Assembly (NCBI GenBank): GCA_044892525.1 | Contig: CM097888.1 | Coordinates: forward strand, 41,106,001-41,170,000 | DNA: 64,000 nt | Direction of reading: 5' to 3' | From: Schmidtea polychroa | Taxonomy: Eukaryota | In this document: positions 40,730-58,770 of the stretch, piece by piece | How positions within the stretch are numbered: position 1 is the stretch's first letter | Layout: each line of letters opens with the position of its first letter | Notes under the pieces: model-generated | The model's input: only the letters and a program-made list of their open reading frames with translations | The model's database searches: none | What the model was told of the DNA's origin: nothing | Made by a program: the position numbers and the translations under genes

Positions 40730-41713
40730 TGTTGAGGTCTCGATATTCGGGAACACTCAACTTACTGGTTCTTATATATGTACAAATATATCAAAAGACA
40801 AAGTGATTTATAAAACTTTTATTATAAAGAAAAATTTACCAATATGAATTTGTTGCTAGATTACAAAAATCCAAAAATCCTTCAAATATCCAACCGAATA
40901 TGCTTGTATGTACTGTGTGAATGTTATGTATTCTCTTGCTGTGTTGCGTGTAGGCTTTTGAACGTTTCTGTTTGTCTGTTCGAGTTTTAGCACTAATAAG
41001 GATTAACCTTTTTAGTATGTTAACGCGGTTAAAATTTTGGGGCCAAAAAAATGAATTTTGACTCGCTATTTATACTTTTTCTTTTAAGAGAAAATGATTA
41101 AAAATTTAATTAATATATTTTAAGTATTCTTAAGTATGCTTAAAAAATGAATTTAATATATTTTAGCAGATGTTTTTCCTTAATACTCTAACAGATATTA
41201 TTTAACCAGATGTTTTTCTTACTCTATTATTTAATAATTACAATTATTTTTCCTTACAACTTGCGTGCATTATTTTAACAAAATTTAGATTTCTAATTAT
41301 TTTATAGTATTATTATTATTTCATTATATTATTTATCTCTACTTATAAAACTAATTATTAATGATTTAATTTACCCTTTTATAAAAATATTAAATGTATA
41401 CGGAAAGATATATTAAATAAAAATTAACAGCTACTCAAAAATATGTACAAACTTCTATAGAATAAAAATAATTAATATATACACCAATAATATCATAAAG
41501 AAATAAAATAAGTAAAATAAAGGATAGTCCAAATGACACAGCATGAATAAAGTAAATAATGAATTTAGTTAACACATAATCGTCAATATTTTGAATTGTC
41601 CGGCTTTGGTTGTCTGGGTTCCACATAGATATTGACTCTGAACTTGTTGCTGCCCGTTCTATAGTAGTGTGTTAGTTCAAACTCTTCAATTCTTCTTCCT
41701 CTGTCATCCAACA
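40730..41713 (-). repeat. 3' LTR (984 bp)
   Basis: Identical to 56049-57032 except GTA (41015-41017) vs TGT (56334-56336). AATAAA on the minus strand at 40818-40823. Confidence 0.97.
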
Positions 41714-42101
41714 CTCCTCCTAGGGTCGATAAAGTAATGTCCTCATTACCTTTATCGCTAAGGACCAATTCGATTTCGCAACCGTTTATATACATTGTTG
41801 CTCTTTGGAATCCTTTCTTCAATGCCAATTTTAACACATCACCATCAATAATTCGTCTGCCGAAGTGTTGATGTATTTCTTTTTCCGAGATAGTGGATCT
41901 TCCCTCTTTGATGATGAACATTGGCTCCTCCAACTCGACATTTGGCTCTGATCCTAGTTCGTCATCTATCTGCATTGCTTCGCTCGGTGAGAAATATTCT
42001 TCATCCGAGTCTAAATCACATTGTGGGTCAGCATAGTTGTAACTACTTGATGTCTGAGGTTCTTCCTTTATTTTGATTGCTTGTGGTACGTCTGCTCCCA
42101 T
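41583..42101 (-). CDS. ORF4, 172-aa acidic protein running through the PPT into U3 of the 3' LTR
   Basis: True ATG at 42101. The frame crosses the LTR boundary at 41713. A diverged homologue at 13.6/15.5 kb supports coding status. Confidence 0.65.
   Translation of the reverse strand: MGADVPQAIKIKEEPQTSSSYNYADPQCDLDSDEEYFSPSEAMQIDDELGSEPNVELEEPMFIIKEGRSTISEKEIHQHFGRRIIDGDVLKLALKKGFQRATMYINGCEIELVLSDKGNEDITLSTLGGVLDDRGRRIEEFELTHYYRTGSNKFRVNIYVEPRQPKPDNSKY
41714..41721 (-). promoter_or_regulatory. Polypurine tract
   Basis: Minus strand AGGAGGAG immediately before TGTTGG of the 3' LTR. Confidence 0.65.
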
Positions 42102-42447
42102 CTTTATTGAATTTCAATTCTCTTTGTGAGGGTTCGATATATATATCTCCCTCAAATTCTTCTGGCTCATCGCTGTTTTCTTCTATTGGACTGAGTTGAT
42201 GGCCATTATTTTCCTTTTGGAATGCTGTCATATCCCACCTTATGACTTCTTCCCATTGCTTTTCGACCAAGAGGTAAATGACTTTTGCGATTAGTGTTGT
42301 ATCTTCTGCTGAGAACGGTTCGGGTTTTTTGAGGATGTTGTTGATTGCTTTCTTCCATTTTGGGTGTGTTGCGATTACCTTGTATGCGAGATTCGATAGT
42401 TTGATTCTGTGTGGTGCTACATTTTTGACGAATGAACACATGAACAC

Positions 42448-45400
42448 TAGGGTGGGTCGAAAATTTTTTTTTCTCCAAACATGCCTAAAAAGTTGTGCTT
42501 ATGCTAGAAAATGAAATATCCCTGCAAAAGACTGCTGTTTAAAAGGGTTTACAGGTCCCAACTTTTGTTTGTATGTATTAGTACTATCCCAGTAAAAATG
42601 CTCGCACACGTGCCATTGTAAATTCATCCTGCAAGCAGTCACACGCTTGCAGAAAGACCATTTTTGACATGCTCTATTCACAAGTCCGAGCTAACGCGTG
42701 CATGTATAGAGAGGTTAATTCACGGAAGCACCTTCACACAAGCACTCACAAAGACAATTTCTTCTGAACAATACTAACACACACACTACAGTCAACACAT
42801 AATCCACATGGATACTACTAGTCAGTCTAAACTCAGATAATTTAATTTGTTTCGATTGGATGTCAAGTGTTTGCTGGACCTAATTAAAAAAGTTAACTTG
42901 ATGATTCACTTTTATTTTGCCAGAGCTGAGTACAGAAGAGCAGTTATGAAGGAACAGAGAAATAAGCAATTTCGCAAAACAAGAAGTAAATCACGTCATT
43001 GTCTGTTTGGTCAAACTTGTGAACTACCCAGAAACCAATTACCTACTTGTGAAGATGTGTTTCGTGATTACTGTTATAATGAGAAATGTACGCAATTTCA
43101 TACTGGCTTTAACGAACAAGCAACTCTTCTCGCAAATAAGGTGAAGGAAATTTATATGAAGGCAAGTATCCCAACTGTTGAGTTCAGTAGTATTGTGGTT
43201 CGTGTCAAGCGACTAATATCAAAAGTGCGTGAATTAGAGAAGTATCCAGAATGCAAGAGGTCATCTGCCAAATTTCAAGATAAGTTAAGCTCGTTTTCCA
43301 AATAGTTTGACATATGTTGCTGCAAATGTTTTAATTATGGTGCTCGAGGAAGATTTCAGTGTACATGCCGATTGGCCTTGAAAATTCCTACCTTAGAGTG
43401 GGAGTTCTGGATTGACCAACAAACTACCAGAAACATGAAAATCGGAAATACGGACAGACAGGAAACCTCAAAATTGAAGAGAAAACAAACGAAAAGCAGC
43501 CCTACAGGAAAAGGAAAACAAATGAAAAATGAAATAATGGACACTGAAGTTAATGATCTACATCCGACCTCAAGAAGTGACACGGAGAGTGAAGCCGCTA
43601 GTGATGAAAGTAAAGATAAGTTAGACAATTCAACAGGAAGTTCAGAGTCAAGCGTAGAAGAATGTGATGAATTTCAAAATAGAAGACATTATCCTGAATT
43701 AAGTAAAGCTGTTGACAGATGTGGTGTGAGCAACAGAGACACGTGTTTGCTAGTAAACGCTTTTCTGAAAGATATGGAACTGTTATCCTCTCAAACAATC
43801 ATTGATCCCGCAAAATTACGGCGTCAGAGAAAGTACTGGAGGGAGAGAGAAATTGAACAGCATTCAGCAGAAGCGAAAAACTTGATTTGCCTCGGTTTCG
43901 ACGGGAAACAAGATTCCACCTTACTTCATAGAAGGATCCTAAAAGAGGAGCATTATGTGATTGTCGCCTTTCCAGGGGATACATATATCGATCATGTTGT
44001 ACCTCAAAGTAGTAAAGCTGTGGATATTGGCAAAGAAATCATGTCAATCATCGTTAGCACGCAGTCCTCACTGACCCTTCAAGCAATTGTGTGCGATGGA
44101 ACCAATACAAACACCGGAAAAAATAATGGAATAATCAGAAGACTCGAAAAAAGCCTAGGGCGACCTCTACAATGGCTGATATGCTTGTTGCATGCAAATG
44201 AATTGCCATTCAGGAAGTATTTTTCAGTCGTCGATGGTGGAGAAACAAAAGGTCCAAAAACGTCATGTGGTGAAATAGGAAGCGTTCTTGATTTTGATCC
44301 AAAAGACAAGCCCGTAGTAGCCTTTATGTCCCTTCCTGGAAAGGTCGTAGATATTAGTGAAAATGTCAAGAAAGAATTGAACACTGATCAATTGTATTTC
44401 CTCAGAGTATGCTTGGCAGTCCAGAAAGGGTACCACAACAACAAGGATGTCCCTTTTCTACAAATGGCACAACCAGGAAATTTGAATCACAGTCGCTGGC
44501 TAACGAAAGCTAATAGAATTCTGCGACTATATATGTCCGAAACTGCTCCATCTGAACCTCTCATGCGAATAGTGAAATTTATTGTCAATTTCTATGGACC
44601 GTCATGGTTTTATATAAAGACTCACTCGTCATGCCAAGATGGTGCAAGAAATATTTTTTATATGCTCCAACTTCTGCAGGATTTGGATCCATCAGACCAA
44701 GAAATCATCTTTCCTGTCATTCAGAACAACAATTACTTCTCACATCCAGAAAATATACTCCTAGCTGCTGTTGGTGATGATGATGAAGAAATCAGAAAGT
44801 TTGCAACAGAAAAAATCATAACTGCAAGACAAAATTTTCTCCCTTCCGAAGTGATTCGCACTATGGACAAGAATACTGTCTTTCTTCAGTCGTCTGCTAC
44901 ATCATATGTTGACATGATTGACTGGACAAAATGTAATTTGACGCCTCCCCCTCTTTTATCTCATATATTGGATCATGAATTGAAGATGAATAAGAAAATT
45001 ACATTAGAACAATTTCCCTGTCATTCTCAAGCCGTTGAAAGAGCCATCAAAGATGTTTCTTCTGCCAGTTGCAAAGTGTTTGGTCACAAGTCCAGACATG
45101 GTATGGTACTACTGTGTAAAAAATCAAGGAAGGAATTGCCCAAGGTGCAAAGCAAAATGATTTCACGTGACTTCTTTTTATGCCCTCGCTAATACATTTC
45201 TAAACTTTTGGCTGGATGTTTTTAATAAAAAATAATTTCGAAAGTTGATTTTTGTCTTTGAAAAGGATAATTCAAATTTGGCCCTTCCTAATCACTGACG
45301 TTGTCAGGATATATTTCAATGCGGGATGAGGACACAGAATATACTATCTCAGCCCAAGAGAGTAAATAATATACTTATAAGCTCTTAAGAAAGCTACATC

Positions 45401-45617
45401 TAAATATGGACAAAGGCGCAAAACACATTCCGACACTAGCCAAATTACATTGTTTTCACACTTATGTTGAACTGCATTTTCGGAGAAAAGTTGGGAGCAG
45501 TAAATGTCCATAAATCTAAGTAAAATGGTTTGATTCGATTTTTCTATACCAAAATACAACTTTTTAACCATGTTTCCTTTCTTGAACTCAAAATTTATTA
45601 ACATTCGACCCACCCTA
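42448..45617 (+). mobile_element. hATm-type DNA transposon (3,170 bp) nested in ORF3
   Basis: 14-bp TIR TAGGGTGGGTCGAA / TTCGACCCACCCTA. Perfect 8-bp TSD ATGAACAC. The subgroup name rests on the TAGGG ends and the FDGK.D motif. Confidence 0.92.
42847..45192 (+). pseudogene. hATm transposase with one in-frame TAG (43303-43305)
   Basis: The two track ORFs share a frame (SK*FDICCCKC). Motifs LGFDGKQD, VCDGTNTNTG, ICLLHANELP and PCHSQAVER. The true start is uncertain (possible short first intron). Confidence 0.85.
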
Positions 45618-46604
45618 ATGAACACATCTTCAGCTAACTCTCTGACTCCCATGACATTGTACAGATCTAATGTCAGCGTATTGAGTTTCTTTATTATTTC
45701 GTATCCCACAATGATTTTTCCGAGTAGCAGCTTCTGTATGTCGATCAGCGCTTGGTATTCGTCTTCATTTCCTCTTATTGAATCCCTGTCTGCTCTTGTC
45801 TTCTCCGGGTAATAATGTTGGATTTTGGTGCGTGGAGTCACCTTTTTATTGTATACGATTTCTCCTCTAAAATTTCTGATGCATATCTCTACTGGTCTGA
45901 GATTGTTATTGATGTCGCATACTTCTTTGACATCGACGAACATGATTGCCCTTTGTCGTTCGGGGATTGACAACTGTTGATGTGTGAATGACATCCGTTT
46001 CGAGATGAAATCCTGATGTATCACGATTTCCGACTGTATCATCTCTAATTCTCTGAAAGGATTGGGTATGGTTGGGACATATAGAATTTCGATAGCCATC
46101 ACACAGGGTAAATTGTTCATTTGGATGACCAAATTGTTGAAATCGTTTGGCACGCTTCGATTTGTCTTCATCGTCTTGATCACCACCGTGCAGTTGCTTG
46201 TTGTTATAATAGGGATTCGTTGTTGGCAAATTGAGACCTCCGTTCTGGTCATATGGAATAGTATTCTATGTGGGACTTTTCTTCCTTCATTTGCTGCGAT
46301 ATCTGCATTTTTGAACATATCATAGGTGCCTATTATATCTCTCAGCTTTATCCTTCGGGCTTCATTAAATTTAACTAAGTGCATTTCTCTTTCTTCGATT
46401 TCGCACTTCATTTCATTGGGTATGCAGACCTGGTTAGGGAAACTTCTGATGGTGATTGGTGAGCCGTCTGAGGTGATTTTATTTTGCAAATTTTTGTAGA
46501 AACTGTGGTATAGTTTTTGAATGGAGCAGCTGTATTGTTGGACTGGACGTTGTATGGGATTGAATGGTTTGGGATTGACTCTGGTATTGTTGGATTGCAT
46601 TTTT

Positions 46605-46625
46605 CTAAAAAAACAATATAAACAT
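46605..46625 (-). promoter_or_regulatory. Candidate 3' splice acceptor for an ORF3 subgenomic mRNA
   Basis: Minus strand TTTATATTGTTTTTTTAG|AAAAATG, with the AG ending 4 nt before the ORF3 ATG. Confidence 0.5.
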
Positions 46626-46741
46626 ATTTACAGCGCATTTGAGGCTTTACCTTATACGCTTCAATATAAATAAAAATATAAATATATGTGAGTTTAAATA
46701 TTATCATTGACCAATAGGAATTGAAATTATCTATATTATCT

Positions 46742-47572
46742 TTAAACCAATGAGGACATTGTGTATTGTCCTGGCCTATACTTATCCAAATGAAAATGCC
46801 CTGGTACATTTTTGACCAGTCGGTGCCGATACCGCTGCCTTTTCCATTTGTATTTTTTATACACTTGAACACTGGTGATAATAGCTAAAATACTCAATGC
46901 TAAAATGCTTGATGAGATTACATAGAAAGGCCATCGTGGTTTAGCAGGTTTTACTTGAAATGCTCTTAGTTCATCCCAGTTATTTATGATTATGGGTTTT
47001 CCCGTAGGTAATTTTACCAGTTTCCTATCAAACTGTCTTAGATTTTTTATTATTAATTTTTTGTATATTTGTCTAGTTACTTTAAATGTCGTTTCTCTAT
47101 CTGTGTTTGTTATCGTTTGTAATGACTGTTGGGTGGATGCCGAATTTGTGGTAGTTATTGTTATGGTGGTTGTTGGCATGCTATTATCTATGGGCTTATA
47201 TATGTTTGTGATAGTGGTTCTTATTCTTTTGCACCTTACTTGTGATGTGTCAACTAAGGTATTCCATTGTGCACAAAGTGTGTAATTAGTGTTAGGCTGT
47301 AGATTTATGAATTCAACATTGTCTCCTCTTTCAAATTCATTAGTTGATCTATTCTCAATTTTTTTCATAAGCTTGGGTATATCGTTCCCAGTTTCTAGAT
47401 ATAAGTCTCTTATGGGTGATTTATTCAAGTTATATACTTTAATCTTATACGGTGAAATGTTGATTAATATATCTTCCTCCATGTATTTTACTGAGTGTAT
47501 GCTCTCATTTTCTACTTCAGTTGATTTACATAGCCCTATAATTGTTAAAAAGATCGCTGCCATCATCAGTGC
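46742..47572 (-). other. Post-integrase type-I membrane protein domain (signal, FN3-like strand pattern, Thr-rich stalk, TM, basic tail)
   Basis: Hydrophobic ALMMAAIFLTIIGLCKS (47522-47572). Four N-X-S/T sequons. VEFINLQPNTNYTLCAQW, then PTTTITITTTNS, then TM FYVISSSILALSILAIITSV (46868-46928) followed by YKKYKWKRQRYRHR. Confidence 0.75.
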
Positions 47573-50500
47573 TTTTTGTGATCGTAATCCATATTTGTGA
47601 GGTGGTTTTTCTATTAACTCTGTTTCTGCTAGTTTGCATCTATTAACATGTACTATTATCGGATCCTCATTTTTATGTTTTTGTAAATGCAGGTTTTCAT
47701 GTACTACTTTTACTACTTCGTATGGTCCTTTAAATGGTCTTGCTAATTTAGTTGTTTTGCCTTTACCTACTTGTGGAGACATAAGTCTAACCTTATCTCC
47801 CACTTTAAAATTATGAGGTTTACTATTTTTATCGTAATCTGCCTTATATTGTTCTTGTCTAAATCTAACTTTTAAGTTTGCAACTTTATATACCTCTTGT
47901 AATCTCTCTTGCATTAATGTTACATAATCTGGCGCATCTAAATATTGTGATACTCGAGGCTCTCTTAAGAACATTAGAAAATATGGTGAATATCCCGTTG
48001 TCTCATTTGGTGTGATATTATGGATGTATGTGCATTGATTAACGTATTCATCCCAATCATTTTGGTTTTTTCCCACAAACACAGCTAATCTACTTAGCAA
48101 TGTCCCATTGAATCTCTCTACTAAACCATCGGTCTGAGGGTGGTATGCTGTTGTGTTGATTTTATGCATGTTAAATATGTTAGCTACTCTTTTTATAGTT
48201 TCACTCATGAAATTTTTCCCTTTATCTGTTAATAATTTTCTCGGTGTACCGATTTTAAAGATTATTTTTTCCACAAGTAATTTAGCTACTGTTTCTGCTG
48301 TTTCATCTTTTGTAGGAAATGCCTCTGCCCATTTTGTAAAATAATCGCTAAAAACTAGTATGTGCTTATTCCCATTAATTGTTGTGGGTAGTTTACACAA
48401 AAAATCCATTGCGCACAGTTCCATTGGTGATGTTGTAGCTGGGATTGGGTGTAAAGGTGCTTTAGTTTTTGTTCCTGTATTTTTTCTAGTTGCGCATATT
48501 GTGCATGCATTACACCATCTCTTGACATCCTTTTTCAAATCGTCCCAATAATATTTTTGCATCAATCTGCTTGCTGTTTTCCTACTTGATAAATGACCTC
48601 CTAAAGCACCATTGTGATATTGTAACAGAAGAATTTGTCTTAATCTTTGTGGTACTACTATTAATTGTTTACCGCTAAAATCCTCAATAACAATTAACTT
48701 CTTACAGATTTTATACTTTTGGTTAGTTCCCTTTTTTATTTCTTCTCTTATCTTGAAGAGTTCTGGATCTTTCATTTGTTCCTCATATATTTCTATTGGT
48801 TTTTCGGTTACTAATGCAAAAACTTCTAGTGCTCCTAACTCTGGAATTCGTGATAATGCATCTGCATTCCTGTTTATTCTACCTGATTTGTATGCAATCT
48901 TTATGTGCATGTCTTGTATTTTTATTGCCCATTTTAACAGTCTACTGGATGTATCTTTATGTTTCCATAACCCTTCTAATGGCTTATGGTCTGTTCTAAT
49001 TACTACTTCAGTTCCATATATGTATGGTTTAAATTGTTTTAATGCAAAAACTATAGCATAACATTCTTTCTCAATTGTTGAGTACCTAATCTGTGCTCCT
49101 TTTAATGTTTTGCTTGCATAAGCTATTACATAATCTTTACCCTTTTCCTCTTCTTGTCCTAAGACTGCCCCTATGGCCTTCCCGCTGGCGTCTGTCATGA
49201 CAATGAACTGTTTTTTAAAGTCTGGGTATCTTAGTATCGGTGCTGTTATTAATTTTTCTTTTAGTTGATCAAAAGCTTTTTGGTGTTCATCTTTCCATTT
49301 CTTTTGTGGCTTGTTAATTTTATCGTTAATCTCTTGTACTATTAACACTCCTTTACTCTCTCCCTTTGTTTTGACTCCTTTTGTTAACTCAATTAGTGGT
49401 GCTGCTATTTTTGCATAATCTTGTATGAATTTGCGATAATATCCTGTGAGACCTAAAAATCCCTGTACTTGTTGTAATGTTTTTGGAACTGGGAATTTTT
49501 TAACTACTTCAATTTTATCGGGATTAGGTATTATACCATCTACTGTAACTATATGTCCTAAGAATAATGCTGAAGGTTCTGCCCATTTACACTTAGTGGG
49601 TTTTATTTTGATTTTTGCTTTTCTTAATCTTTCTAGTACGTTAGCTATATCTTTTAGATGTTCCTCAAATGTTTTTGATGAAATTAATATATCATCCATA
49701 TATACTGCGCAATGTTGTACGTCTACTAATACTGTATTCATTAAACGTTGAAATGTTGCTGGCGCATTAGTTAACCCAAAAGGTAATCTTGTATATTCAT
49801 ATAAACCGTCTTCTATCACAAAAGCTGTCTTTTCCGCATCCCCCTCTTCCATTTGAATTTGCATGTAGCCTTTATTTGCATCTATTACTGTGAAATATTT
49901 AGTATCTCTAAGTTTATCATATTGTTCTTGTGCTTTTGGGAATGGGTATGAGTCTTTTACTGTTACATCATTTAATTTACGATAATCAATGCACATTCGA
50001 ATTTCCCCGTCTTTCTTTCTAACTGGTACGATAGGTGATGCCCATTGTGAAAAACTTTGTTTTATTACGCCTGCCTCTTTTAATTCTTTAATTTGTCGTT
50101 TTATTTCCTCCCTCAGTTTATATGGTACACTATAGGGTCTCTGTTTTATTGGTCTAGCATTCCCTGTATCGATTACATGTTTGATAATGTCAGTATCTCC
50201 TAAATCAAATTCGTGTTTTGCAAAAACATCACTGTATTCGTCAAGTAATATTTGTAGTTGTAGTTGTTGTGTTTCATTTAGATAATTATTATTTATTTTA
50301 ATCTTATCATAAAATTTAATATTATTCGCTCTACTCTGTTCGACCATTCTCTCACTGACATCACTCGTCATCGACATTTCACATACTTCAAATGTTTGCT
50401 CTAATTCACCTTTGAACAACTTTCCCAATTTTGTACCTTTATGAATTTTTACTTTATTTCTTTCGTAATTCGCGATTCTTATTGGAATTGTCCCATTATT

Positions 50501-53500
50501 TGGGATTACACACTCGTCTGTTAACATTACATTATGATTTCGTGATATTGCCGTTTCAGGCTCGAAAATGAAAGTGTCCTCACTTTTAACATTAACTTTT
50601 ACTGGAATTATATGATCACTTTGATACTCTAGTTCAAATGTCTCTAATGCAATTACCTCAGTAAATCTTGCGTCTTGACATATTGCCTTCCGTTTGACTG
50701 TACTATCCGTTAAATCGATTACACAGTTTTTTAACTTTCTGAGTATATCCATGCCAAGGACACATACGCATTTACACTCTGCTACTACCTTGAAGACATG
50801 TTCAACCACTTGATCCGAAAAGTGGACTGTTAATTCGATATCTCCTTTTAATGGTATGTAATGTGATGATAATGAAATTACTCTATCTCTTGTGCTCACG
50901 ATATTTTTCTTTTGGTTTCCGGTTAACTGATCTTCACGAATCATAGAAGCTGCTGCTCCTGTGTCGCATAATGCCTTTATTATCGTATCATTTATCACTA
51001 TTTGTAATTTAGGCCTTGCTTCATTTAACCCTTCTAATATATCGTCAAGTTCTAACCCATAACATCCATAAGTTTCCCTTGGAACACAATGACAATTACC
51101 ATTTTCACCTGGGATTCTAATTTCAATATTATTTCTCAATTCTGTCAATTGTTCTCTTTGATTATCATATAACCCAATATGTGGTTGCTCAGTATTTTCT
51201 GATCTGTTTGTATCGTCCTCTTTCTCATTGGTGATCATTATTTCACCCTCTTCCCTTCGACTTTTCATCCGTTTGATTTCCTTATCGTGCCTCGCAGTGA
51301 TCAAATATTTGGCTATGAATGGACATAAACATGCTATCATTTTATATGAATTACCAAAAACTTGTCTCAGTTGTCTTAACGAAACTAATGATGAGCAAAT
51401 CATTTTCAATAGTGCTACTGTATAATATATACCCAATATAGTGGAAAACGTATTTCCGAGAATCGCAAAATATCCCCATATGCTGTATAATACTCTATAC
51501 ACAACTTTCTTGAAGTGCTCTTTTGATAATAATACATCAAAGTTGTAATTTCCTCCATAACTATTTTCGATGATTTTGTTTACCATGATAGAAAGAACTT
51601 TTTCTTTTTCATGAGGAAATAACATATGTTTTCTGGCGCTCTCTATCGCCTCTCTCGTATACATCCCATTGTTATCCATTTCGTTGACTTCCTGAAATTC
51701 TAACTTTTTCTCAAGTTCAGTTAGTTCTAGTTTTTGTGGTTTAGTCGCTTCTTTTCTATCTGACATTGTAATCCACATATCATCATTTATTTTGTATAAT
51801 GGATCTAATAGATTAGTACATTTATCAATTTTTCTCGGAACATAGTCTTTATCTGTTAATATCCTTGTTATTGGTTGGAGGTATACAGTTTCTCCTTTAT
51901 ACACTACTGGCAATTCGTTTGTGCACTTATTATTCGTTGCTAAAGATACGCTAACCGGTTTACACTGAAATGTTTGTATCACTTCACCGACAACTCTTGC
52001 AAATGTCCCTTTCTCTGCAAATAAAATTGGTGCCATTAAATCTGGGTTTGTGACTGCAACCGCCATCTTTGTTCTTAATATTTCTCTGTTGAGTTTACAA
52101 TCGTTTGCAATAGTTGCTTGATATACTTTGTCCAATTGTACTAACTGATGATGATAGAAATAATCAATTTTATTATTAAAATATGATGCTAGCTTGACGT
52201 CGAATTTATCTATTCTCGATTTTGCCTCTTTAATTTCACTTCCGCTGATATAAATTCCCTCATAATTTGTTTGCACGACTGCCTTGCCACATTTTATGCT
52301 TTCACCTTTTCCTAAAAATCTCATCCCCTCTGTTTCAGAATCTGACATGTATATTGTTGGGGTATCTCTCTCTTGAATTATCGTTGCTCGTCGTTTTTGG
52401 TCTTTGATGCTCTTGGATTCTACATCCGTAAACTGTTTACCTCGTATCGTTCTGAATTTCAGTGTCTTTAATTTAGTTAGATGGCATTCGTATTTATTCA
52501 CTCTGTATATGATCATTGACTCGCCTGTATCACAGCTTGTCTCCTCTAATGTGCAGAACTTATGTGTCATCATTTTCTTTGATGAACTATCAAATGACGC
52601 TTTGAATTTCCTTAATTCAATATAATACTGCCGTCTCACTACAATATTGTCTGCCACATGCCCCCATATTTTATACCTTCCTCCTTCACAATATCCTCCT
52701 GTTGATGACCATCCCACGACATTTACTAATTGTCTTACTCGTGCTCCTACCTGAGCATCTAACTCAAATCCATCCGGCGTTTTTATCTTTTTTGTTTTAA
52801 ATGCATTTTCGCATTCAACTGGCGTTATTATTATTGCTTCTGGTGCCCATGTTGGGGTTAATATTGTTCTTGCCACCTTGTTACACACAAAACTTTCCTC
52901 TGAATATTTGACTATACATTCTCCTGCTTCTGTGTGAATGAAATCAGATTCCTGATATATATGGAAAATCTTGGGGTCTGCTACAATTAATTTTGTTGGA
53001 TTAGCCTCTGGGCAATTTTCTACATCCAGCAATGAATATTTTTGTCCCCACTTGGGATTCTGACAGTCATACGCTATGATCGCATTATTCCCTTTTATCA
53101 GATCTAATAACAATGTTATTACTATAATTACTATTGACATTGTCGACTTTCTTTCTTTTTGACTTGGTTTCATAGTTGTTTTATTTACTAGATTTTTTAC
53201 TGTTTCCTCCGTATCATCTATTTCTACATTAATATTATCTTCTACGCTTTCCTGAGCACTTTCGATTAGACTCTCATCATACAGTATTTTCCATCCTCCC
53301 TTTAATTTTATCCATGGCATAGCATCTATCTTTAATTTATTATATATCATTTTAGCGATATTTTCTATTTGATTCTTTGGATTCAATCGCAAATGTTTCT
53401 TGTATCTTGCTATTAAATATGCCATTGCCGTAATCACTTTATCTCGATTAACTCCTGTTGTAAATAATATCTTTAACACTGTCTCTTCATTTGCTTCCTC

Positions 53501-54280
53501 TGCACTCAATTCTCTAATCTCTTTTTCCATTAATTTAATCTTTTTAACTATATTTTCTATTAACGCTGATGGTTTTGCTTCCGGAAATCGTCTCATATTC
53601 ATTGCTTTAACTAACTCTGTTATCATCTTTATATCTTTGTCATTATCCTGAATTTTTGGGACTTCCTGTCTCATATTATTTGCAATATCTCTTAGACGCT
53701 CTGCTGCCTTTCTGTCATCTGACTTTTCGGCTATTTCCGATTTTCGAGGCCTTCCTCTACCTCGTCTCATCGTCTCTGCGTCCTGCATATTTGCTTGTTT
53801 CGCAATTTTTTCTATTGTCTCATGTAAATTATCATATTTAGTATCAATAGGTTTAAAGATTTCATCGCTAACTGTTGGTGACCTCATTGCTCCTCCTGAA
53901 GAAGCATCCCACAATCTAAATAATTTATCATAGTCATTTTCGTCATTTATACTCAATTCTACTGATGGAGTTGGTGTATCAATTTCTTTACTTTCTTGCC
54001 TTTCTATTACTGCAGAAATAATATTGTTATCAATGACGTTTACTCCATAGTCAATTATATATTCATTATTCATCATTTCTACGCCGTTAAAATACAGTTT
54101 CACTTTATCATTATCTCCCAATTTCTCGGGCCAATTTGCTGTGGCCATCTGTTTCACTTTATTCACTTTTGTGCAAACATGTACCCCTGTACTACGCATA
54201 AGTATTCTCGAAAGGTCCTTTGCCTCAATAGTTATATTCAATGACTCATGTAATTTCTGATTTTTTCTCACAAATTCACC
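46742..54280 (-). CDS. pol: Giant accessory-Env-Pol-membrane polyprotein (2,509 codons from GTG at 54271; the open frame begins at 54280)
   Basis: Uninterrupted frame. PR LCDTGA (DTG 50957-50965). RT YRKLN, PFGLTNAPATFQR and YMDD (49691-49702). RNase H TDASG. IN HHCC, D-D35-E and GPY. Confidence 0.95.
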   Translation of the reverse strand, partial: GEFVRKNQKLHESLNITIEAKDLSRILMRSTGVHVCTKVNKVKQMATANWPEKLGDNDKVKLYFNGVEMMNNEYIIDYGVNVIDNNIISAVIERQESKEIDTPTPSVELSINDENDYDKLFRLWDASSGGAMRSPTVSDEIFKPIDTKYDNLHETIEKIAKQANMQDAETMRRGRGRPRKSEIAEKSDDRKAAERLRDIANNMRQEVPKIQDNDKDIKMITELVKAMNMRRFPEAKPSALIENIVKKIKLMEKEIRELSAEEANEETVLKILFTTGVNRDKVITAMAYLIARYKKHLRLNPKNQIENIAKMIYNKLKIDAMPWIKLKGGWKILYDESLIESAQESVEDNINVEIDDTEETVKNLVNKTTMKPSQKERKSTMSIVIIVITLLLDLIKGNNAIIAYDCQNPKWGQKYSLLDVENCPEANPTKLIVADPKIFHIYQESDFIHTEAGECIVKYSEESFVCNKVARTILTPTWAPEAIIITPVECENAFKTKKIKTPDGFELDAQVGARVRQLVNVVGWSSTGGYCEGGRYKIWGHVADNIVVRRQYYIELRKFKASFDSSSKKMMTHKFCTLEETSCDTGESMIIYRVNKYECHLTKLKTLKFRTIRGKQFTDVESKSIKDQKRRATIIQERDTPTIYMSDSETEGMRFLGKGESIKCGKAVVQTNYEGIYISGSEIKEAKSRIDKFDVKLASYFNNKIDYFYHHQLVQLDKVYQATIANDCKLNREILRTKMAVAVTNPDLMAPILFAEKGTFARVVGEVIQTFQCKPVSVSLATNNKCTNELPVVYKGETVYLQPITRILTDKDYVPRKIDKCTNLLDPLYKINDDMWITMSDRKEATKPQKLELTELEKKLEFQEVNEMDNNGMYTREAIESARKHMLFPHEKEKVLSIMVNKIIENSYGGNYNFDVLLSKEHFKKVVYRVLYSIWGYFAILGNTFSTILGIYYTVALLKMICSSLVSLRQLRQVFGNSYKMIACLCPFIAKYLITARHDKEIKRMKSRREEGEIMITNEKEDDTNRSENTEQPHIGLYDNQREQLTELRNNIEIRIPGENGNCHCVPRETYGCYGLELDDILEGLNEARPKLQIVINDTIIKALCDTGAAASMIREDQLTGNQKKNIVSTRDRVISLSSHYIPLKGDIELTVHFSDQVVEHVFKVVAECKCVCVLGMDILRKLKNCVIDLTDSTVKRKAICQDARFTEVIALETFELEYQSDHIIPVKVNVKSEDTFIFEPETAISRNHNVMLTDECVIPNNGTIPIRIANYERNKVKIHKGTKLGKLFKGELEQTFEVCEMSMTSDVSERMVEQSRANNIKFYDKIKINNNYLNETQQLQLQILLDEYSDVFAKHEFDLGDTDIIKHVIDTGNARPIKQRPYSVPYKLREEIKRQIKELKEAGVIKQSFSQWASPIVPVRKKDGEIRMCIDYRKLNDVTVKDSYPFPKAQEQYDKLRDTKYFTVIDANKGYMQIQMEEGDAEKTAFVIEDGLYEYTRLPFGLTNAPATFQRLMNTVLVDVQHCAVYMDDILISSKTFEEHLKDIANVLERLRKAKIKIKPTKCKWAEPSALFLGHIVTVDGIIPNPDKIEVVKKFPVPKTLQQVQGFLGLTGYYRKFIQDYAKIAAPLIELTKGVKTKGESKGVLIVQEINDKINKPQKKWKDEHQKAFDQLKEKLITAPILRYPDFKKQFIVMTDASGKAIGAVLGQEEEKGKDYVIAYASKTLKGAQIRYSTIEKECYAIVFALKQFKPYIYGTEVVIRTDHKPLEGLWKHKDTSSRLLKWAIKIQDMHIKIAYKSGRINRNADALSRIPELGALEVFALVTEKPIEIYEEQMKDPELFKIREEIKKGTNQKYKICKKLIVIEDFSGKQLIVVPQRLRQILLLQYHNGALGGHLSSRKTASRLMQKYYWDDLKKDVKRWCNACTICATRKNTGTKTKAPLHPIPATTSPMELCAMDFLCKLPTTINGNKHILVFSDYFTKWAEAFPTKDETAETVAKLLVEKIIFKIGTPRKLLTDKGKNFMSETIKRVANIFNMHKINTTAYHPQTDGLVERFNGTLLSRLAVFVGKNQNDWDEYVNQCTYIHNITPNETTGYSPYFLMFLREPRVSQYLDAPDYVTLMQERLQEVYKVANLKVRFRQEQYKADYDKNSKPHNFKVGDKVRLMSPQVGKGKTTKLARPFKGPYEVVKVVHENLHLQKHKNEDPIIVHVNRCKLAETELIEKPPHKYGLRSQKALMMAAIFLTIIGLCKSTEVENESIHSVKYMEEDILINISPYKIKVYNLNKSPIRDLYLETGNDIPKLMKKIENRSTNEFERGDNVEFINLQPNTNYTLCAQWNTLVDTSQVRCKRIRTTITNIYKPIDNSMPTTTITITTTNSASTQQSLQTITNTDRETTFKVTRQIYKKLIIKNLRQFDRKLVKLPTGKPIIINNWDELRAFQVKPAKPRWPFYVISSSILALSILAIITSVQVYKKYKWKRQRYRHRLVKNVPGHFHLDKYRPGQYTMSSLV
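51298..53140 (-). other. env: Envelope glycoprotein domain, chuvirus-G/herpes-gB-like (class III fusion) type, located upstream of the protease
   Basis: Signal MSIVIIVITLLLDLIKGNNA, then IIAYDC...YSLLDVENC. 14 Cys in the ectodomain, including GWSSTGGYCEG and FQCKPVSV...KCTNELPV. Membrane segment VLYSIWGYFAILGNTFSTILGIYYTVALLKMICSSLVSL (51377-51493). Confidence 0.85.
53270..53635 (-). other. Bcl-2-family-like domain (BH1 and BH2)
   Basis: Ungapped 60-aa alignment (53291-53470) of ILFTTGVNRDKVI...QIENIAKMIYNKLKIDAMPWIKLKGGW with Bcl-2 ELFRDGVNWGRIV...[27 protein letters not shown]. Confidence 0.75.
53740..53770 (-). other. AT-hook motif
   Basis: RRGRGRPRKS. Confidence 0.7.
54000..54240 (-). 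other. Ubiquitin-like domain at the polyprotein N-terminus
   Basis: KVKQMATANWPEKLGDNDKVKLYFNGVEMMNNEYIIDYGV resembles ubiquitin [21 protein letters not shown] and the UBL3/MUB NWP motif. No C-terminal GG. Confidence 0.6.
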
Positions 54281-55809
54281 TTAACACTTTATCATTTCTT
54301 TCAATTCTATTTCTAGTTCAAATACTCTTGTCATATTTTGCCTCTTTACCATTAGTGATATCAAATTTCTCAAATATTCTAAGTCAATTCCTTCGACTTG
54401 AACTCTATTTATTATACGCAATGTCTCATTGTCATCATAAGGCCATTTCTCTAATGTCTCTTTCAATTCCTCTTTTAATTCTTTACATCTATTTGCTTCT
54501 GCAAGAAATTTCTCATCCGCTTCTCTTGCTTCGCGAAACTCATCATTATCTATATCTACATCATTAGTAAAACACTGAAACTCATTTAATGACATTTCTA
54601 ACTTTCTCTCAATAAGTCTCCCATATTGAGTTTTAAATTCTTTTAATTCCTCTCTCAAACTGTTTATTTCCTTATTAGCTGATATCAACTCAGCACTATT
54701 AATTTGTTTTATCTCAGGCTCATTTTTAAATCTCACTCTATTAGGCGATTCGCTTCGCGCATTGTTACATACTTTAGCTAAGTGACCATATTTTTGGCAA
54801 TTATAACATTTGATCTGTCCATTAAAATTTACTTTATCTCTACCATCATTATTATAAGGGCTTCCTCGTCTTTCTCTATATGAATTCTGTCTATATGGAC
54901 TTGTCTGTCTACGTCTCAAATCATTTGTATTATCTCTATTATCATATCTATTACTTCTATCATATTTATTATTTCTCAAATTATTTCTATTAAAATCGAC
55001 TCGATTATCTCTCGTATAATTATTTCTATTGTATTCGTATCGATTATCTCTATCAAAAGTGTTTCTATTGTTTCTATTCTCAAAGTTTCTGTTTCTCACA
55101 TTATCAAACCTCCTCCTGTTTTCAGGCGATTGACTTCTATCCGGACTCGGGCTTACCCTTCGTCTATTTTTTACAAAGTTTAAATATAGTTGCTTCATCT
55201 CCTCCCAGGGAATGTTGTCATCTGACTTACCCAACTCAGATTTTACCTCGATGGGTTTTTGAATTTCCATTGCATCTACATGTGAGCTAAATCTATCTCG
55301 TTGTATTGCTTCTATACGTTTAGCTTTATGAACTAATTCATTTAAATTACCATATTCTACCATAATTAATGCTTTATATAAATATTTTTGTATACCATTC
55401 CAAAACTGATCCTCAATTAACTTTGCTGTGTGCTCGCCCGCACCAAATGCCTTTTTCGCTAACTCCGTAATCGTATATACATATTCACCAACTGATTCTC
55501 TAGTACCTTGATATCTGTTTCTAAATTTTTGAACATTTATCTTTTGTAAATCGCTATCGATTACTATTTCTGCTCTCAGATATCTTACGAGTTGATCAAA
55601 ATTATTCCCTTTACATTCTAAGTTATTGTATGCCTGTAACGCATAACCTTTTAAGTATAATGGGATTCTCATTTTTAATTCATCAGGTGTCCAACCACAA
55701 GCTTCTGCATACTGAGCGATCTCAGTGAAAAAATCGTCGAACTTTCAGGCTCTCCTCTATATGGTTCTACTGGTAAAATTTTTATGTAATTATTATTATT
55801 ATTATTCAT
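54281..55809 (-). CDS. gag: Gag (~509 aa) with a 1-nt frameshift near 55743-55745
   Basis: ATG at 55809. PVEPYRGEPE/FDDFFTEIAQYAEACGWTPDELKMRIPLYLKGYAL is the Ty3 capsid start. Other motifs: YRQ-like RYQGTRESVGEY, an R/N-rich linker and zinc knuckle CYNCQKYGHLAKVC. Confidence 0.9.
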
Positions 55810-56028
55810 CCTATAGACTATTCTATTTCTGAGATTATAAACTATTTCGGGTTGATTATCTATTTTATCTTTTTGAATTATTTAATAATTTTCAAAACTG
55901 AATTTATTTATTTAAAAATTGATCAATGATATTATTTTTATAAATATATTTTCCCAATATAAAATACTATACCCTCTGATCTCAATTCCTATCCCCCAAA
56001 TTGTGAATAACAATAATTGATTTTAAAG

Positions 56029-56046
56029 TCCCGGTTCGCGGCACCA
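56029..56046 (-). promoter_or_regulatory. Primer-binding site, tRNA-Phe-like
   Basis: TGGTGCCGCGAACCGGGA starts 2 nt inside the 5' LTR end. It is complementary to ...TCCCGGTTCGCGGCACCA, close to metazoan tRNA-Phe 3' ends. Confidence 0.8.
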
Positions 56047-56048
56047 AA

Positions 56049-57032
56049 TGTTGAGGTCTCGATATTCGGGAACACTCAACTTACTGGTTCTTATATATGT
56101 ACAAATATATCAAAAGACAAAGTGATTTATAAAACTTTTATTATAAAGAAAAATTTACCAATATGAATTTGTTGCTAGATTACAAAAATCCAAAAATCCT
56201 TCAAATATCCAACCGAATATGCTTGTATGTACTGTGTGAATGTTATGTATTCTCTTGCTGTGTTGCGTGTAGGCTTTTGAACGTTTCTGTTTGTCTGTTC
56301 GAGTTTTAGCACTAATAAGGATTAACCTTTTTATGTTGTTAACGCGGTTAAAATTTTGGGGCCAAAAAAATGAATTTTGACTCGCTATTTATACTTTTTC
56401 TTTTAAGAGAAAATGATTAAAAATTTAATTAATATATTTTAAGTATTCTTAAGTATGCTTAAAAAATGAATTTAATATATTTTAGCAGATGTTTTTCCTT
56501 AATACTCTAACAGATATTATTTAACCAGATGTTTTTCTTACTCTATTATTTAATAATTACAATTATTTTTCCTTACAACTTGCGTGCATTATTTTAACAA
56601 AATTTAGATTTCTAATTATTTTATAGTATTATTATTATTTCATTATATTATTTATCTCTACTTATAAAACTAATTATTAATGATTTAATTTACCCTTTTA
56701 TAAAAATATTAAATGTATACGGAAAGATATATTAAATAAAAATTAACAGCTACTCAAAAATATGTACAAACTTCTATAGAATAAAAATAATTAATATATA
56801 CACCAATAATATCATAAAGAAATAAAATAAGTAAAATAAAGGATAGTCCAAATGACACAGCATGAATAAAGTAAATAATGAATTTAGTTAACACATAATC
56901 GTCAATATTTTGAATTGTCCGGCTTTGGTTGTCTGGGTTCCACATAGATATTGACTCTGAACTTGTTGCTGCCCGTTCTATAGTAGTGTGTTAGTTCAAA
57001 CTCTTCAATTCTTCTTCCTCTGTCATCCAACA
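56049..57032 (-). repeat. 5' LTR (984 bp)
   Basis: See 3' LTR. TATA-like TATAAATA on the minus strand at 56386-56393. Confidence 0.97.
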
Positions 57033-57084
57033 CTTTCTTCGTTTACGGATCAACTTGCATTCCTATGCAATTTTGGAATCCTGT

Positions 57085-58149: not shown

Positions 58150-58770
58150 TTGCAATTTATTAGGATCATCATTATTACGAGTATTATTAATTGGGTTGTT
58201 CTCATTATCATTACTAGTACTATTATTATTATTGTATCATTTTTGTTGCTGTTATCACGATGTTTGTAAAACTTATTGTTACCGTCGTTATCACTGCCCC
58301 NNNNNNNNNNNNNNNNNNNNNNNNNNNNNNNNNNNNNNNNNNNNNNNNNNNNNNNNNNNNNNNNNNNNNNNNNNNNNNNNNNNNNNNNNNNNNNNNNNNN
58401 NNNNNNNNNNNNNNNNNNNNNNNNNNNNNNNNNNNNNNNNNNNNNNNNNNNNNNNNNNNNNNNNNNNNNNNNNNNNNNNNNNNNNNNNNNNNNNNNNNAA
58501 TTATCGCTGTTGTTAACATGAATATCATTATTACAATTATCACTATTATGATTGTGATTATTATTATTACAATTATCATTAGCCTTAATATTGTCATTAT
58601 TATTATTATCATTATTATAATTATTATTATTATTATTATGATCGTTATGATTATTATCAGTATTACCATTATTATCATTTTTGTTATTATCATTAAAATT
58701 ATTATTATTATTCTTGTTCTAATTATTATCATTCGGGTTGTTTATTATCAGTTGTTGTTAAGATTGTAAT
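58150..58770. repeat. Degenerate (ATT/ATC)n trinucleotide low-complexity tract containing an N-gap (58301-58498)
   Basis: Direct reading; it produces spurious poly-Ile ORFs. Confidence 0.85.

What the first reader, a model, noticed from the sequence alone, without database searches (positions are those of the whole stretch)
40730..57032. Young retrovirus-like Ty3/Gypsy element whose Pol polyprotein is flanked in frame by two membrane proteins and a host-modulation module
Seen: matched 984-bp LTRs differing at 3 clustered nt, TSD, PBS, PPT, Gag, and one 2,509-codon open frame. That frame is ordered Ubl, AT-hook, Bcl-2-like, signal, glycoprotein, TM, PR, RT, RH, IN, signal, FN3/Thr-rich, TM. 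Two further accessory ORFs follow. Established: env-bearing Ty3/Gypsy elements normally carry env as a separate ORF downstream of pol, and large accessory-ORF-rich LTR elements (Burro) are described in Schmidtea. Inference: the polyprotein threads the ER membrane twice and is cut by signal peptidase plus the element's protease, like a flavivirus/alphavirus polyprotein. That would give an enveloped particle with fusion and attachment proteins plus anti-apoptosis and RNA-handling functions. I know of no described element with this layout.
Basis: partly seen in the sequence, partly recalled or inferred. Interest (0 to 1): 0.96.

Follow-up and report, generated by a model that had tools for sequence, protein, structure and literature searches.

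The report
Burro-type retrovirus-like element, envelope in frame
This is a real, young, nearly intact retrovirus-like mobile element whose membrane-fusion protein sits inside the same giant reading frame as its enzymes, but this layout was already described for the "Burro" elements of planarian flatworms, so it is a new member of a known kind.

Summary
The anatomy is real. A 16,303-bp Ty3/gypsy LTR element lies on the minus strand, with 984-bp LTRs differing by one 3-nt cluster, a 4-bp target duplication, PBS, PPT and gag. One stop follows gag, then the same frame runs 2,509 codons.

Frame order: weak SUMO-like hit, AT-hook, sub-threshold Bcl-2-like domain, internal signal, gB-type class III fusion glycoprotein (PF24664, E 7e-90), membrane anchor, PR-RT-RH-IN, second signal, Thr-rich ectodomain, membrane anchor.

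Eight distant relatives keep Env in frame before Pol, and seven keep a post-integrase pair of hydrophobic segments. It is therefore not a chimera.

The novelty claim fails:
- Arkhipova & Yushenova 2019 describe planarian Burro elements with SUMO-like, BCL2, in-frame Env, then PR.
- GAG-ENV-POL gypsy elements are catalogued in flatworms, nematodes and bryozoans.

FN3 is unsupported.

Possibly new: the in-frame post-integrase membrane protein. The flavivirus-like processing model is plausible but untested. The host is unidentified, and no second copy of this element was found.

The parts
40730..57032 (-). Whole LTR element, 16,303 bp, including a nested DNA transposon of about 3.2 kb
56049..57032 (-). 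5' LTR in element sense, 984 bp, TG..CA ends
   Evidence: 981/984 identical to the other LTR; the 3 differences are adjacent
40730..41713 (-). 3' LTR in element sense, 984 bp
40726..40729 (.). Target-site duplication CTTT; the other copy is at 57033-57036
56029..56046 (-). Primer-binding site: 18 nt whose plus-strand reading ends in CCA like a tRNA 3' end. It starts 2 nt from the 5' LTR.
   Evidence: The cognate tRNA was not identified; there are no tRNA genes in the window.
41714..41725 (-). Polypurine tract abutting the 3' LTR
54281..55672 (-). gag, 463 aa, one CCHC zinc knuckle. It ends in a single stop, after which the same frame continues.
   Evidence: It is 24-25% identical to the Gag of relatives L001, L010 and L011.
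46742..54271 (-). 2,509-codon open frame, in the gag frame: N-terminal module, Env, PR-RT-RH-IN, post-IN membrane protein
54005..54124 (-). Weak SUMO/ubiquitin-like match (PF11976), aa 50-89
   Evidence: E 0.038, 14.2 bits, below the cut-off of 23.8. The region is conserved in L012. A 2-sequence profile found no ubiquitin-like chain in the PDB.
53738..53764 (-). AT-hook-like basic motif, aa 170-178
   Evidence: E 0.5; short motif. The motif is conserved in P0242.
53291..53560 (-). Bcl-2-like domain, aa 238-327
   Evidence: PF00452 at E 1e-5, 26.4 bits (cut-off 31.4), and the only notable hit; a 2-sequence profile gives 60 of 60 top PDB hits in the Bcl-2 family, best E 0.045. The domain is conserved in L012.
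53087..53140 (-). Internal signal-like hydrophobic segment preceding Env, aa 378-395
   Evidence: An equivalent segment is present in the relatives.
51182..53134 (-). Env: class III (gB-type) fusion glycoprotein, PF24664, aa 380-1030. The ectodomain has 14 Cys and no N-glycosylation sequon.
   Evidence: E 6.9e-90; Foldseek against PDB: the top 50 are all herpesvirus gB; chu-like and mononegavirus glycoproteins, E 6e-34
51386..51460 (-). Env membrane anchor, about aa 938-962, followed by a basic tail
   Evidence: A conserved anchor is present in the relatives.
50729..51022 (-). Aspartic protease (RVP), aa 1084-1181, with a DTG motif
49547..50023 (-). Reverse transcriptase, aa 1417-1575, with a YMDD motif
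48911..49297 (-). RNase H, aa 1659-1787
48137..48655 (-). Integrase: zinc-binding domain and catalytic core, aa 1873-2045
47522..47572 (-). Second internal signal-like segment directly after IN, aa 2234-2250
46745..47521 (-). Post-IN membrane protein 'Y': a 199-aa ectodomain (5 N-glycosylation sequons, Thr-rich), an anchor at aa 2450-2472 and a basic 37-aa tail
   Evidence: There is no Pfam or PDB match and no sequence similarity to the post-IN parts of the relatives.
42043..46600 (-). Accessory gene homologous to the RNase_T-type exonuclease ORFs of relatives. It is broken once, by an insertion (the nested transposon).
   Evidence: The two pieces were compared apart, and they match successive parts of the L001 and L010 exonuclease ORFs. 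Our pieces have no Pfam hit themselves.
42847..45192 (+). Transposase-like gene of the nested DNA transposon. It is split into 152-aa and 606-aa ORFs by one 1-nt indel; the intact form is the 756-aa P0121.
41583..42101 (-). 172-aa ORF reading into the 3' LTR; possibly a second accessory gene, with no relatives
   Evidence: Support comes only from its length in AT-rich DNA.

Best explanation
WHAT IT IS
A recently inserted, almost intact copy of a Burro-type Ty3/gypsy endogenous retrovirus of the GAG-ENV-POL class. The host has an AT-rich genome and is probably a flatworm, but this was not shown.

SHOWN BY SEQUENCE
- gag ends in one stop, and the same frame then runs 2,509 codons.
- A cytosolic N-terminal module comes first: a weak SUMO-like hit, an AT-hook and a probable Bcl-2-like domain.
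- Next come an internal signal sequence, a gB-type class III fusion glycoprotein closest to glycoproteins of chu-like and mononegaviruses, and a membrane anchor.
- PR-RT-RH-IN follows.
- The frame ends with a second internal signal, a Thr-rich and sequon-rich ectodomain, an anchor and a basic tail.
- Downstream lies an exonuclease-like accessory gene, here broken by a DNA transposon.

HOW IT MOST LIKELY WORKS (INFERRED)
1. Most ribosomes stop after gag. A minority read on and make the long polyprotein.
2. The first internal signal targets the nascent chain to the ER, so the Env ectodomain enters the lumen and its anchor stops transfer.
3. PR-RT-RH-IN stay cytosolic.
4. The second signal restarts translocation for the C-terminal ectodomain.
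5. Signal peptidase cuts on the luminal side after each signal; small residues at -1 and -3 fit at the second signal and partly at the first.
6. The element's protease cuts the cytosolic junctions.
7. This yields capsid, enzymes, a fusogen and a second surface protein from one message. It also yields a Bcl-2-like protein left with a C-terminal hydrophobic segment, which could dampen host cell death.
For: - LTRs, TSD, PBS and PPT.
- ORFs and frame relation.
- Domains.
- Env: PF24664 at E 6.9e-90. The model (pLDDT 61.7) matches only gB in the PDB top 50, and chu-like virus glycoproteins at E 6e-34.
- There are 14 conserved Cys in ours and in all 8 relatives.
- The same order in one ORF in P0001-P0008: Env 33-40% and Pol 40-43% identical.
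- Internal signals without Met, basic residues on their N-side, and a post-IN hydrophobic pair in 7 of 8 relatives.
- N-terminal module: aa 24-334 are conserved in a second divergent element, L012 (E 3e-17).
- Bcl-2.
- Accessory exonuclease gene in relatives and its homology to ours.
- Literature: Burro has SUMO-like, BCL2, in-frame Env and PR in that order (PMC6431247). GAG-ENV-POL gB-type elements occur in flatworms (PMC13524379). Atlas virus has a single Gag-Pol-Env polyprotein (PMC9094657).
Against: - There are no expression or protein data.
- No second copy of this very element was found, so I cannot tell whether the gag stop is design or damage.
- No stable RNA structure follows the stop (z -0.31).
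- Relatives solve the gag/pol junction in different ways: fused in L001, overlapping frames in L010.
- Both signals in this element start at a Met, which would also suit separate translation.
- Bcl-2 and SUMO-like scores are below the curated cut-offs.
- AlphaFold on the N-terminal module failed (pLDDT 35).
- The post-IN part has no detectable homologue, even among relatives.
- The host is not identified.
- No Burro sequence was available for direct comparison.
Confidence: 0.7

Rival explanations
1. The element is the same, but expression differs. Env and the post-IN protein are each made from spliced subgenomic messages, starting at the Met that opens each signal sequence, as in retroviruses and Drosophila gypsy. 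On this view the shared frame is only genome compaction.
For: - In this element a Met stands at the start of both signal-like segments.
- Splicing is the established route for env in retroviruses and errantiviruses (textbook knowledge).
- A single stop with no stimulatory RNA structure is a weak basis for read-through.
Against: - None of the eight relatives has a Met at the start of its internal signals, yet all keep Env, and seven keep the post-IN part, in frame with Pol over thousands of codons.
- Several relatives carry extra protease domains next to the membrane-protein junctions, which suits polyprotein processing.
- Atlas virus shows that an LTR element can carry env inside a single polyprotein.
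Confidence: 0.25
2. The layout is ancestral and real, but this copy is a dead fossil. On this view the stop after gag is damage rather than design, and the copy makes no polyprotein.
For: - One accessory gene is already broken by an insertion.
- In L001, gag is fused to the long frame without a stop.
- In L012, the frame stays open for 117 codons upstream of the homologous region.
- No other copies were found.
- No read-through structure was found.
Against: - The LTRs are 99.7% identical and differ by one clustered event.
- The 2,509 codons stay open in DNA of 33% G+C, and DTG and YMDD are intact.
- The stop sits exactly at a gag/pol-type boundary, where stops or frameshifts are the norm in retroelements.
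Confidence: 0.3
3. The layout is an assembly chimera or a one-off recombinant of a gypsy element with an endogenous RNA-virus glycoprotein gene.
For: No second copy of this exact element could be retrieved.
Against: - Eight independent contigs from other samples have the same order in one ORF.
- Matched LTRs and a TSD enclose the whole unit.
- The layout is published for Burro.
Confidence: 0.02

Closest known systems
Burro / GYPSM1 giant gypsy-like LTR elements of planarians (Grohme et al. 2018; Arkhipova & Yushenova 2019, PMC6431247)
   Same: - Ty3/gypsy backbone.
- Polyprotein order Ubi2/SUMO-like (PF11976), BCL2, Env, PR, RT, RH, IN.
- Env in frame between gag and pol.
- Env resembles mononegavirus fusion glycoproteins.
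- Apoptosis- and ubiquitin-related extras.
- Accessory ORFs.
- An AT-rich genome.
   Different: - About 13 kb without the nested insert, against more than 30 kb for Burro.
- No MATH_TRAF_C, BIR, ankyrin, AIR1/Smc or dUTPase-like matches.
- gag is separated by a stop instead of being fused.
- The paper does not mention a post-IN membrane protein.
GAG-ENV-POL 'errantiviruses' with HSV/gB-type Env in Platyhelminthes, Nematoda and Bryozoa (Chary & Hayashi 2026, PMC13524379; Sacco et al. 2022)
   Same: - Gypsy Pol.
- gB-type class III Env placed between gag and pol.
- Conserved cysteine architecture.
- Multiple lineages.
   Different: - The paper treats GAG, ENV and POL as ORFs in a given order.
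- It does not mention an in-frame fusion, an N-terminal Bcl-2-like module, a post-IN membrane protein or exonuclease ORFs.
- Its element list could not be read here.
Atlas virus and related nematode belpaoviruses (Merchant et al. 2022, PMC9094657)
   Same: Env is encoded inside one uninterrupted polyprotein of an LTR element, and the envelope gene was captured from a negative-strand RNA virus.
   Different: - BEL/Pao rather than gypsy.
- Order is Gag-Pol-Env, with Env last.
- Env is a class II, phlebovirus Gn-Gc type.
Mosquito BEL/Pao elements with Chuviridae-like glycoprotein (Dezordi et al. 2020, PMC7642597)
   Same: The same glycoprotein family (chu-like, PF24664-type, gB-like fold), captured by an LTR retroelement.
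   Different: A different retroelement superfamily and a different position for the env gene.
Flavivirus-type polyprotein membrane topology
   Same: It would work alike: internal signal and stop-transfer segments thread one polyprotein through the ER membrane, with host signal peptidase cutting in the lumen and the viral protease cutting in the cytosol. This is inference.
   Different: There is no homology. This is a reverse-transcribing LTR element, and processing has not been observed.
Bdelloid rotifer Vesta/Juno LTR elements with DEDDy exonuclease ORF3 (Rodriguez et al. 2017, PMC5408684)
   Same: An accessory 3'-5' exonuclease-type ORF lies downstream of pol in a gypsy-like element.
   Different: There it is RNase D-like DEDDy; here the relatives match RNase_T (PF00929). 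Ours is broken and does not reach Pfam significance itself.

Membership tests
Ty3/gypsy (Metaviridae) LTR retrotransposon | LTRs with TG..CA ends, a 4-6 bp target duplication, PBS and PPT | tested here: met
Ty3/gypsy (Metaviridae) LTR retrotransposon | Pol order PR-RT-RH-IN, and Gag with a CCHC knuckle | tested here: met
GAG-ENV-POL gB-type errantivirus | Env placed between gag and pol | tested here: met
GAG-ENV-POL gB-type errantivirus | Env has the herpesvirus gB-like class III fusogen fold | tested here: met
   the Foldseek top 50 in the PDB are all gB, E 1e-11 to 2e-9. TM-scores are low (0.15-0.22), and the model is only of medium confidence.
GAG-ENV-POL gB-type errantivirus | Pol clusters with the published flatworm, nematode or bryozoan clades | not tested
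Burro-like planarian elements | Polyprotein order SUMO-like (PF11976), BCL2, Env in frame, PR | tested here: met
   The order is met, but the SUMO-like and Bcl-2 hits are below Pfam's cut-offs.
Burro-like planarian elements | Giant size (internal region up to 25 kb, total over 30 kb) | tested here: not met
   16.3 kb in all, about 13 kb without the nested transposon
Burro-like planarian elements | Extra domains: MATH_TRAF_C, BIR, ankyrin, and dUTPase-like between PR and RT | tested here: not met
   none found
Burro-like planarian elements | Gag fused in the same uninterrupted ORF | tested here: not met
   same frame, but with one stop
Burro-like planarian elements | Host is a dugesiid planarian, and the sequence is similar to Burro1-4 | not testable with these tools
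   The host was not identified, and no Burro sequence was on hand.
PF24664 Monjiviricetes fusion glycoprotein | Score above the gathering cut-off over nearly the full profile | tested here: met
   302 bits against a cut-off of 27, profile positions 4-636 of 653
Bcl-2 family (PF00452) | Score above the gathering cut-off | tested here: not met
   26.4 bits against 31.4 (E 1e-5)
Bcl-2 family (PF00452) | Bcl-2 proteins are the best structural or sequence relatives | tested here: inconclusive
   all 60 top PDB hits of a 2-sequence profile are Bcl-xL, A1 or Bcl-2, but the best E is 0.045. The AlphaFold model was unusable.
Ubiquitin/SUMO-like (PF11976) | Significant profile match | tested here: not met
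   E 0.038, 14.2 bits against 23.8; no ubiquitin-like chain in the PDB.
Fibronectin type III | Any profile match in the post-IN ectodomain | tested here: not met
   (no family at E up to 10)
RNase_T / DEDDh exonuclease (accessory gene) | Profile match to PF00929 | tested here: inconclusive
   Our pieces have no hit. They are homologous (E 1e-13 to 4e-4) to ORFs of L001 and L010 that pass the cut-off.
hAT-type DNA transposon (nested insert) | Short terminal inverted repeats and an 8-bp target duplication | tested here: met
hAT-type DNA transposon (nested insert) | hAT transposase domains | tested here: not met
   no Pfam family for the 606-aa ORF or for the intact 756-aa P0121

The most novel reading that the evidence does not exclude
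The in-frame protein after integrase (signal, glycosylatable Thr-rich ectodomain, anchor, basic tail) may be a second virion or cell-surface protein. It recurs in topology, though not in sequence, across a whole clade of large gypsy-type endogenous retroviruses. Some of these place an extra protease domain next to each membrane-protein junction. If so, the clade would be a lineage of reverse-transcribing elements that express two membrane proteins by threading one Gag-Env-Pol-Y polyprotein through the ER membrane. The papers I could read do not describe such a post-integrase membrane protein.
Probability: 0.3. Interest if true: 0.7.

Novelty: new member of a known kind. Interest (0 to 1): 0.42.

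Why it matters
- It gives a compact, nearly intact and recently inserted example of the Burro-type design: a captured RNA-virus fusogen and a Bcl-2-like domain inside a retroelement polyprotein. That makes the design easier to study descriptively than the 30-kb Burro copies.
- Together with the eight metagenomic relatives, it shows that in-frame Env before Pol is a stable, widespread architecture rather than a planarian oddity.
- It points to an unstudied, fast-evolving post-integrase membrane protein and to an exonuclease accessory gene as recurrent parts of that architecture.
- It does not open a new category.

Tried and rejected
- AlphaFold on the N-terminal 379 aa without an alignment gave pLDDT 35 and was unusable. 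I did no fold search on it.
- phmmer of the N-terminal, Env and post-IN pieces against PDB sequences found nothing significant.
- An exhaustive HMMER search with the N-terminal module against 1.84 billion representatives gave only one true relative, P0242. P0241 is a repeat artefact, and P0243 matched only a short stretch and was not followed up.
- The search for other copies of this very element failed. An exact-protein look-up of gag found nothing. A protein-pattern scan and an LTR/PBS DNA pattern scan of metagenome contigs both came back empty.
- Host identification failed. There are no tRNA genes. Other window ORFs have no Pfam family or are a tandem repeat. An exact look-up of a neighbouring ORF found nothing. 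The sample accessions appear in no paper.
- Read-through signal: the fold of the 124 nt starting at the gag stop is no more stable than shuffles.
- No dUTPase was found between PR and RT; there is only a spumavirus-protease-like stretch.
- A ubiquitin-like test with a 2-sequence profile found no PDB hit.
- FN3 was rejected.
- A search for named viral relatives of Env by word-based protein search found only two unnamed 37% hits. The fold search gave the names instead.
- The idea that the plus-strand 606-aa ORF is an antisense gene of the element was rejected. It belongs to an independent multi-copy transposon found with unrelated flanks.

Full report
1. OBSERVATION

The window holds two 984-bp direct repeats, at 40730-41713 and 56049-57032. 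They differ only at three adjacent positions, start with TG and end with CA, and are flanked by a 4-bp duplication, CTTT. Nothing else in the window resembles the element.

All coding capacity is on the minus strand, so the 5' LTR is the one at 56049-57032. Two bases inside it lies an 18-nt stretch complementary to a tRNA-like 3' end (…CCA). A short purine run abuts the 3' LTR.

gag (54281-55672, 463 aa, one CCHC knuckle) ends in a single stop. The same frame then continues for 2,509 codons, 46742-54271. In DNA of 33% G+C an open frame of this length cannot be chance. DTG (protease) and YMDD (RT) motifs are present. The LTR element, its age signal and the giant frame are therefore confirmed.

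2. WHAT THE FRAME ENCODES

Pfam gives the following:
- PF24664, 'Monjiviricetes fusion glycoprotein', at aa 380-1030 (E 6.9e-90)
- RVP at 1084-1181
- RVT_1 at 1417-1575
- RNase H at 1659-1787
- integrase zinc and core domains at 1873-2045

A hydrophobic signal-like segment (378-395) precedes Env. An anchor (about 938-962) and a basic tail follow it.

I predicted the Env structure with a 12-sequence alignment (mean pLDDT 61.7; the beta-rich domains score 75-95).
- In the PDB the 50 best Foldseek matches are all herpesvirus gB (E 1e-11 to 2e-9; TM-scores are low).
- In the viral library the best matches are glycoproteins of chu-like, qin-like, xinmo-like and other arthropod negative-strand viruses (E 6e-34 down; 18-20% identity).

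Env is therefore a gB-type class III fusogen of the chuvirus/mononegavirus kind.

3. THE PART AFTER INTEGRASE

Directly after the last residues that align with the integrases of relatives come these features:
- a second signal-like segment (aa 2234-2250)
- a 199-aa ectodomain with five N-glycosylation sequons and a Thr-rich stretch
- an anchor (2450-2472)
- a basic 37-aa tail

It matches no Pfam family even at E 10, and no PDB chain.

4. THE N-TERMINAL MODULE

An exhaustive HMMER search of 1.84 billion representative proteins found only one true relative, P0242. It lies on a 1.3-kb contig, L012, with 30% G+C. L012 comes from a JGI sample that also holds the nested transposon described below.

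By tblastn, our aa 24-334 align to L012 at 25.5% identity (E 3e-17). The whole module is therefore conserved coding sequence in a second, divergent element.

Evidence for each sub-part:
- Bcl-2-like. On aa 200-350 alone, Pfam's Bcl-2 family is the only notable hit (E 1e-5, 26.4 bits, cut-off 31.4). A two-sequence profile (ours plus L012) searched against PDB sequences returns only Bcl-xL, A1 and Bcl-2 among its 60 best hits, with a best E of 0.045. I rate the Bcl-2-like assignment probable but not proven.
- SUMO-like. The match (PF11976) is weak (E 0.038). A profile search found no ubiquitin-like chain.
- AT-hook. The motif is short but conserved in P0242.
- Structure. AlphaFold without an alignment failed.

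5. IS THE LAYOUT A ONE-OFF? NO

A search with the whole frame found eight proteins of 2,855-4,029 aa on contigs of 12-30 kb from other samples (P0001-P0008). Each has PF24664 followed by PR, RT, RH and IN in one ORF. Env is 33-40% identical to ours, and Pol 40-43%.

- Where the contig allows, Gag lies upstream, either fused (L001) or in a separate ORF (overlapping in L010; set apart in L011).
- L010 has LTR-like repeats 15.3 kb apart.
- All eight have an internal signal-like segment before Env with basic residues on its N-side and no Met.
- Seven have a signal-like segment plus a C-terminal anchor after integrase.
- These post-IN parts are similar within sub-groups but not to ours. Topology is conserved while sequence evolves fast.
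- All eight have an extra protease-like domain after integrase, and two also have one after Env.
- All nine Env ectodomains have exactly 14 cysteines and only 0-2 N-glycosylation sequons.

6. DOWNSTREAM REGION

The 606-aa and 152-aa ORFs on the plus strand (42847-45192) belong to an independent DNA transposon.

- Its intact 756-aa protein (P0121) is 99% identical and is found on at least 24 contigs.
- Eight of those contigs were read. All have unrelated flanks, short terminal inverted repeats and an 8-bp target duplication.
- The window's copy has one 1-nt indel in this ORF.

This insert breaks, once, an accessory gene of the retroelement (42043-46600, minus strand). Compared apart, the two pieces match successive parts of the downstream ORFs of L001 and L010, which carry an RNase_T exonuclease domain. 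The tail of the '418-aa ORF' is therefore transposon sequence.

A 172-aa ORF (41583-42101) reads into the 3' LTR. It has no relative, and I list it only as a possible gene.

7. COMPARISON WITH WHAT IS KNOWN

Arkhipova & Yushenova 2019 (PMC6431247) describe the planarian Burro/GYPSM1 polyprotein.
- It has Gag at the N-terminus.
- An Env region that hits arthropod and fish mononegavirus fusion glycoproteins lies between BCL2 and PR.

This is the order found here, down to the same weak Pfam family for the SUMO-like part.

Chary & Hayashi 2026 (PMC13524379) catalogue GAG-ENV-POL gypsy elements with gB-type Env in Platyhelminthes, Nematoda and Bryozoa, following Sacco et al. 2022. Atlas virus shows env inside a single polyprotein in a belpaovirus. 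Rotifer elements show exonuclease accessory ORFs.

The differences from Burro as described are:
- less than half the size
- no MATH, BIR, ankyrin or dUTPase matches
- a stop after gag
- the post-IN membrane protein, which none of the papers I could read mentions

I could not compare sequences with Burro directly, nor identify the host.

8. MECHANISM

Shown: the order, the frames, the hydrophobic segments with positive-inside flanks, and their conservation.

Inferred:
- occasional read-through of the gag stop
- co-translational ER targeting by the first internal signal
- stop-transfer at the Env anchor
- cytosolic PR-RT-RH-IN
- re-initiation of translocation at the second signal
- signal-peptidase cuts in the lumen and protease cuts in the cytosol

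After such a cut the Bcl-2-like protein would keep the signal as a C-terminal hydrophobic segment.

Against this, no RNA structure follows the stop, and both signals in this copy begin with Met. Spliced subgenomic messages therefore remain a live rival. The stop may also be damage in this copy.

9. VERDICT

It is, however, a new member of a described kind (Burro-type, GAG-ENV-POL gypsy endogenous retroviruses). The post-integrase membrane protein is the one part that may be undescribed.

- One search printed the sequence at the two ends of the nested transposon. I was delimiting it as a neighbour and did not yet know that it interrupts a gene of the retroelement.
- In my reasoning I then worked out how the insertion lies relative to that gene's frame.
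- Also in my reasoning, I recalled short Bcl-2 homology-motif strings from memory.

None of this is used or repeated in the report. The consensus lines printed by the alignment tool were not used.

Noticed in passing
window 42847-45192 (+), inside the accessory gene 42043-46600: A multi-copy DNA transposon of about 3.2 kb, with short terminal inverted repeats and an 8-bp target duplication. It encodes a 756-aa protein with no Pfam family. Copies 99% identical occur on at least 24 contigs from JGI, ENA and Logan samples; the eight that were read all have different flanks. Relatives at 35-58% identity are common on contigs of about 3 kb, and a few are annotated in insects (Diatraea, Frankliniella, Spodoptera).
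   Followed up: partly
window 8205-9313: Four perfect (100%) tandem copies of a 276-bp unit. The 373-aa 'ORF' across them gives many spurious helix-turn-helix Pfam hits.
   Followed up: partly
Env ectodomains: window 51461-53086 and P0001-P0008: All nine Env ectodomains have exactly 14 cysteines. They have almost no N-glycosylation sequons: 0 in the window's copy despite 27 Asn, and 1-2 in the relatives. This is unusual for a viral surface 'glycoprotein'.
   Followed up: partly
P0003, P0004 (also P0001, P0002, P0005-P0008): Relatives carry up to three aspartic-protease domains in one polyprotein: after the Env tail, the canonical PR, and after integrase. The window's element has only the canonical one.
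   Followed up: partly
L010 1-7000 and L011 17000-24900 (sample ERZ25039515): Two related elements sit on contigs next to fragmented bacterial-type genes: MacB/ABC transporter and TetR in L010, and luciferase-like and Mnh antiporter genes in L011. This could be a chimeric long-read assembly, or a host with many transferred genes. I did not resolve it.
   Followed up: no
L001 2-38 and about 16741-16777: A 37-nt repeat lies near both ends of the 16.8-kb contig that carries relative P0002. No LTRs are present. This would fit a transcript-derived contig bounded by the R region.
   Followed up: no
L011 14902-17118: In one relative the ORF after the polyprotein carries ankyrin repeats and a protease-like stretch instead of an exonuclease. 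This recalls the ankyrin repeats reported for Burro.
   Followed up: no
window 3197-3337, 12468-12637, 37356-37502, 58301-58498: Four runs of N. None lies inside the element, and the nearest is 1.3 kb beyond the 5' LTR. They were left untouched.
   Followed up: no
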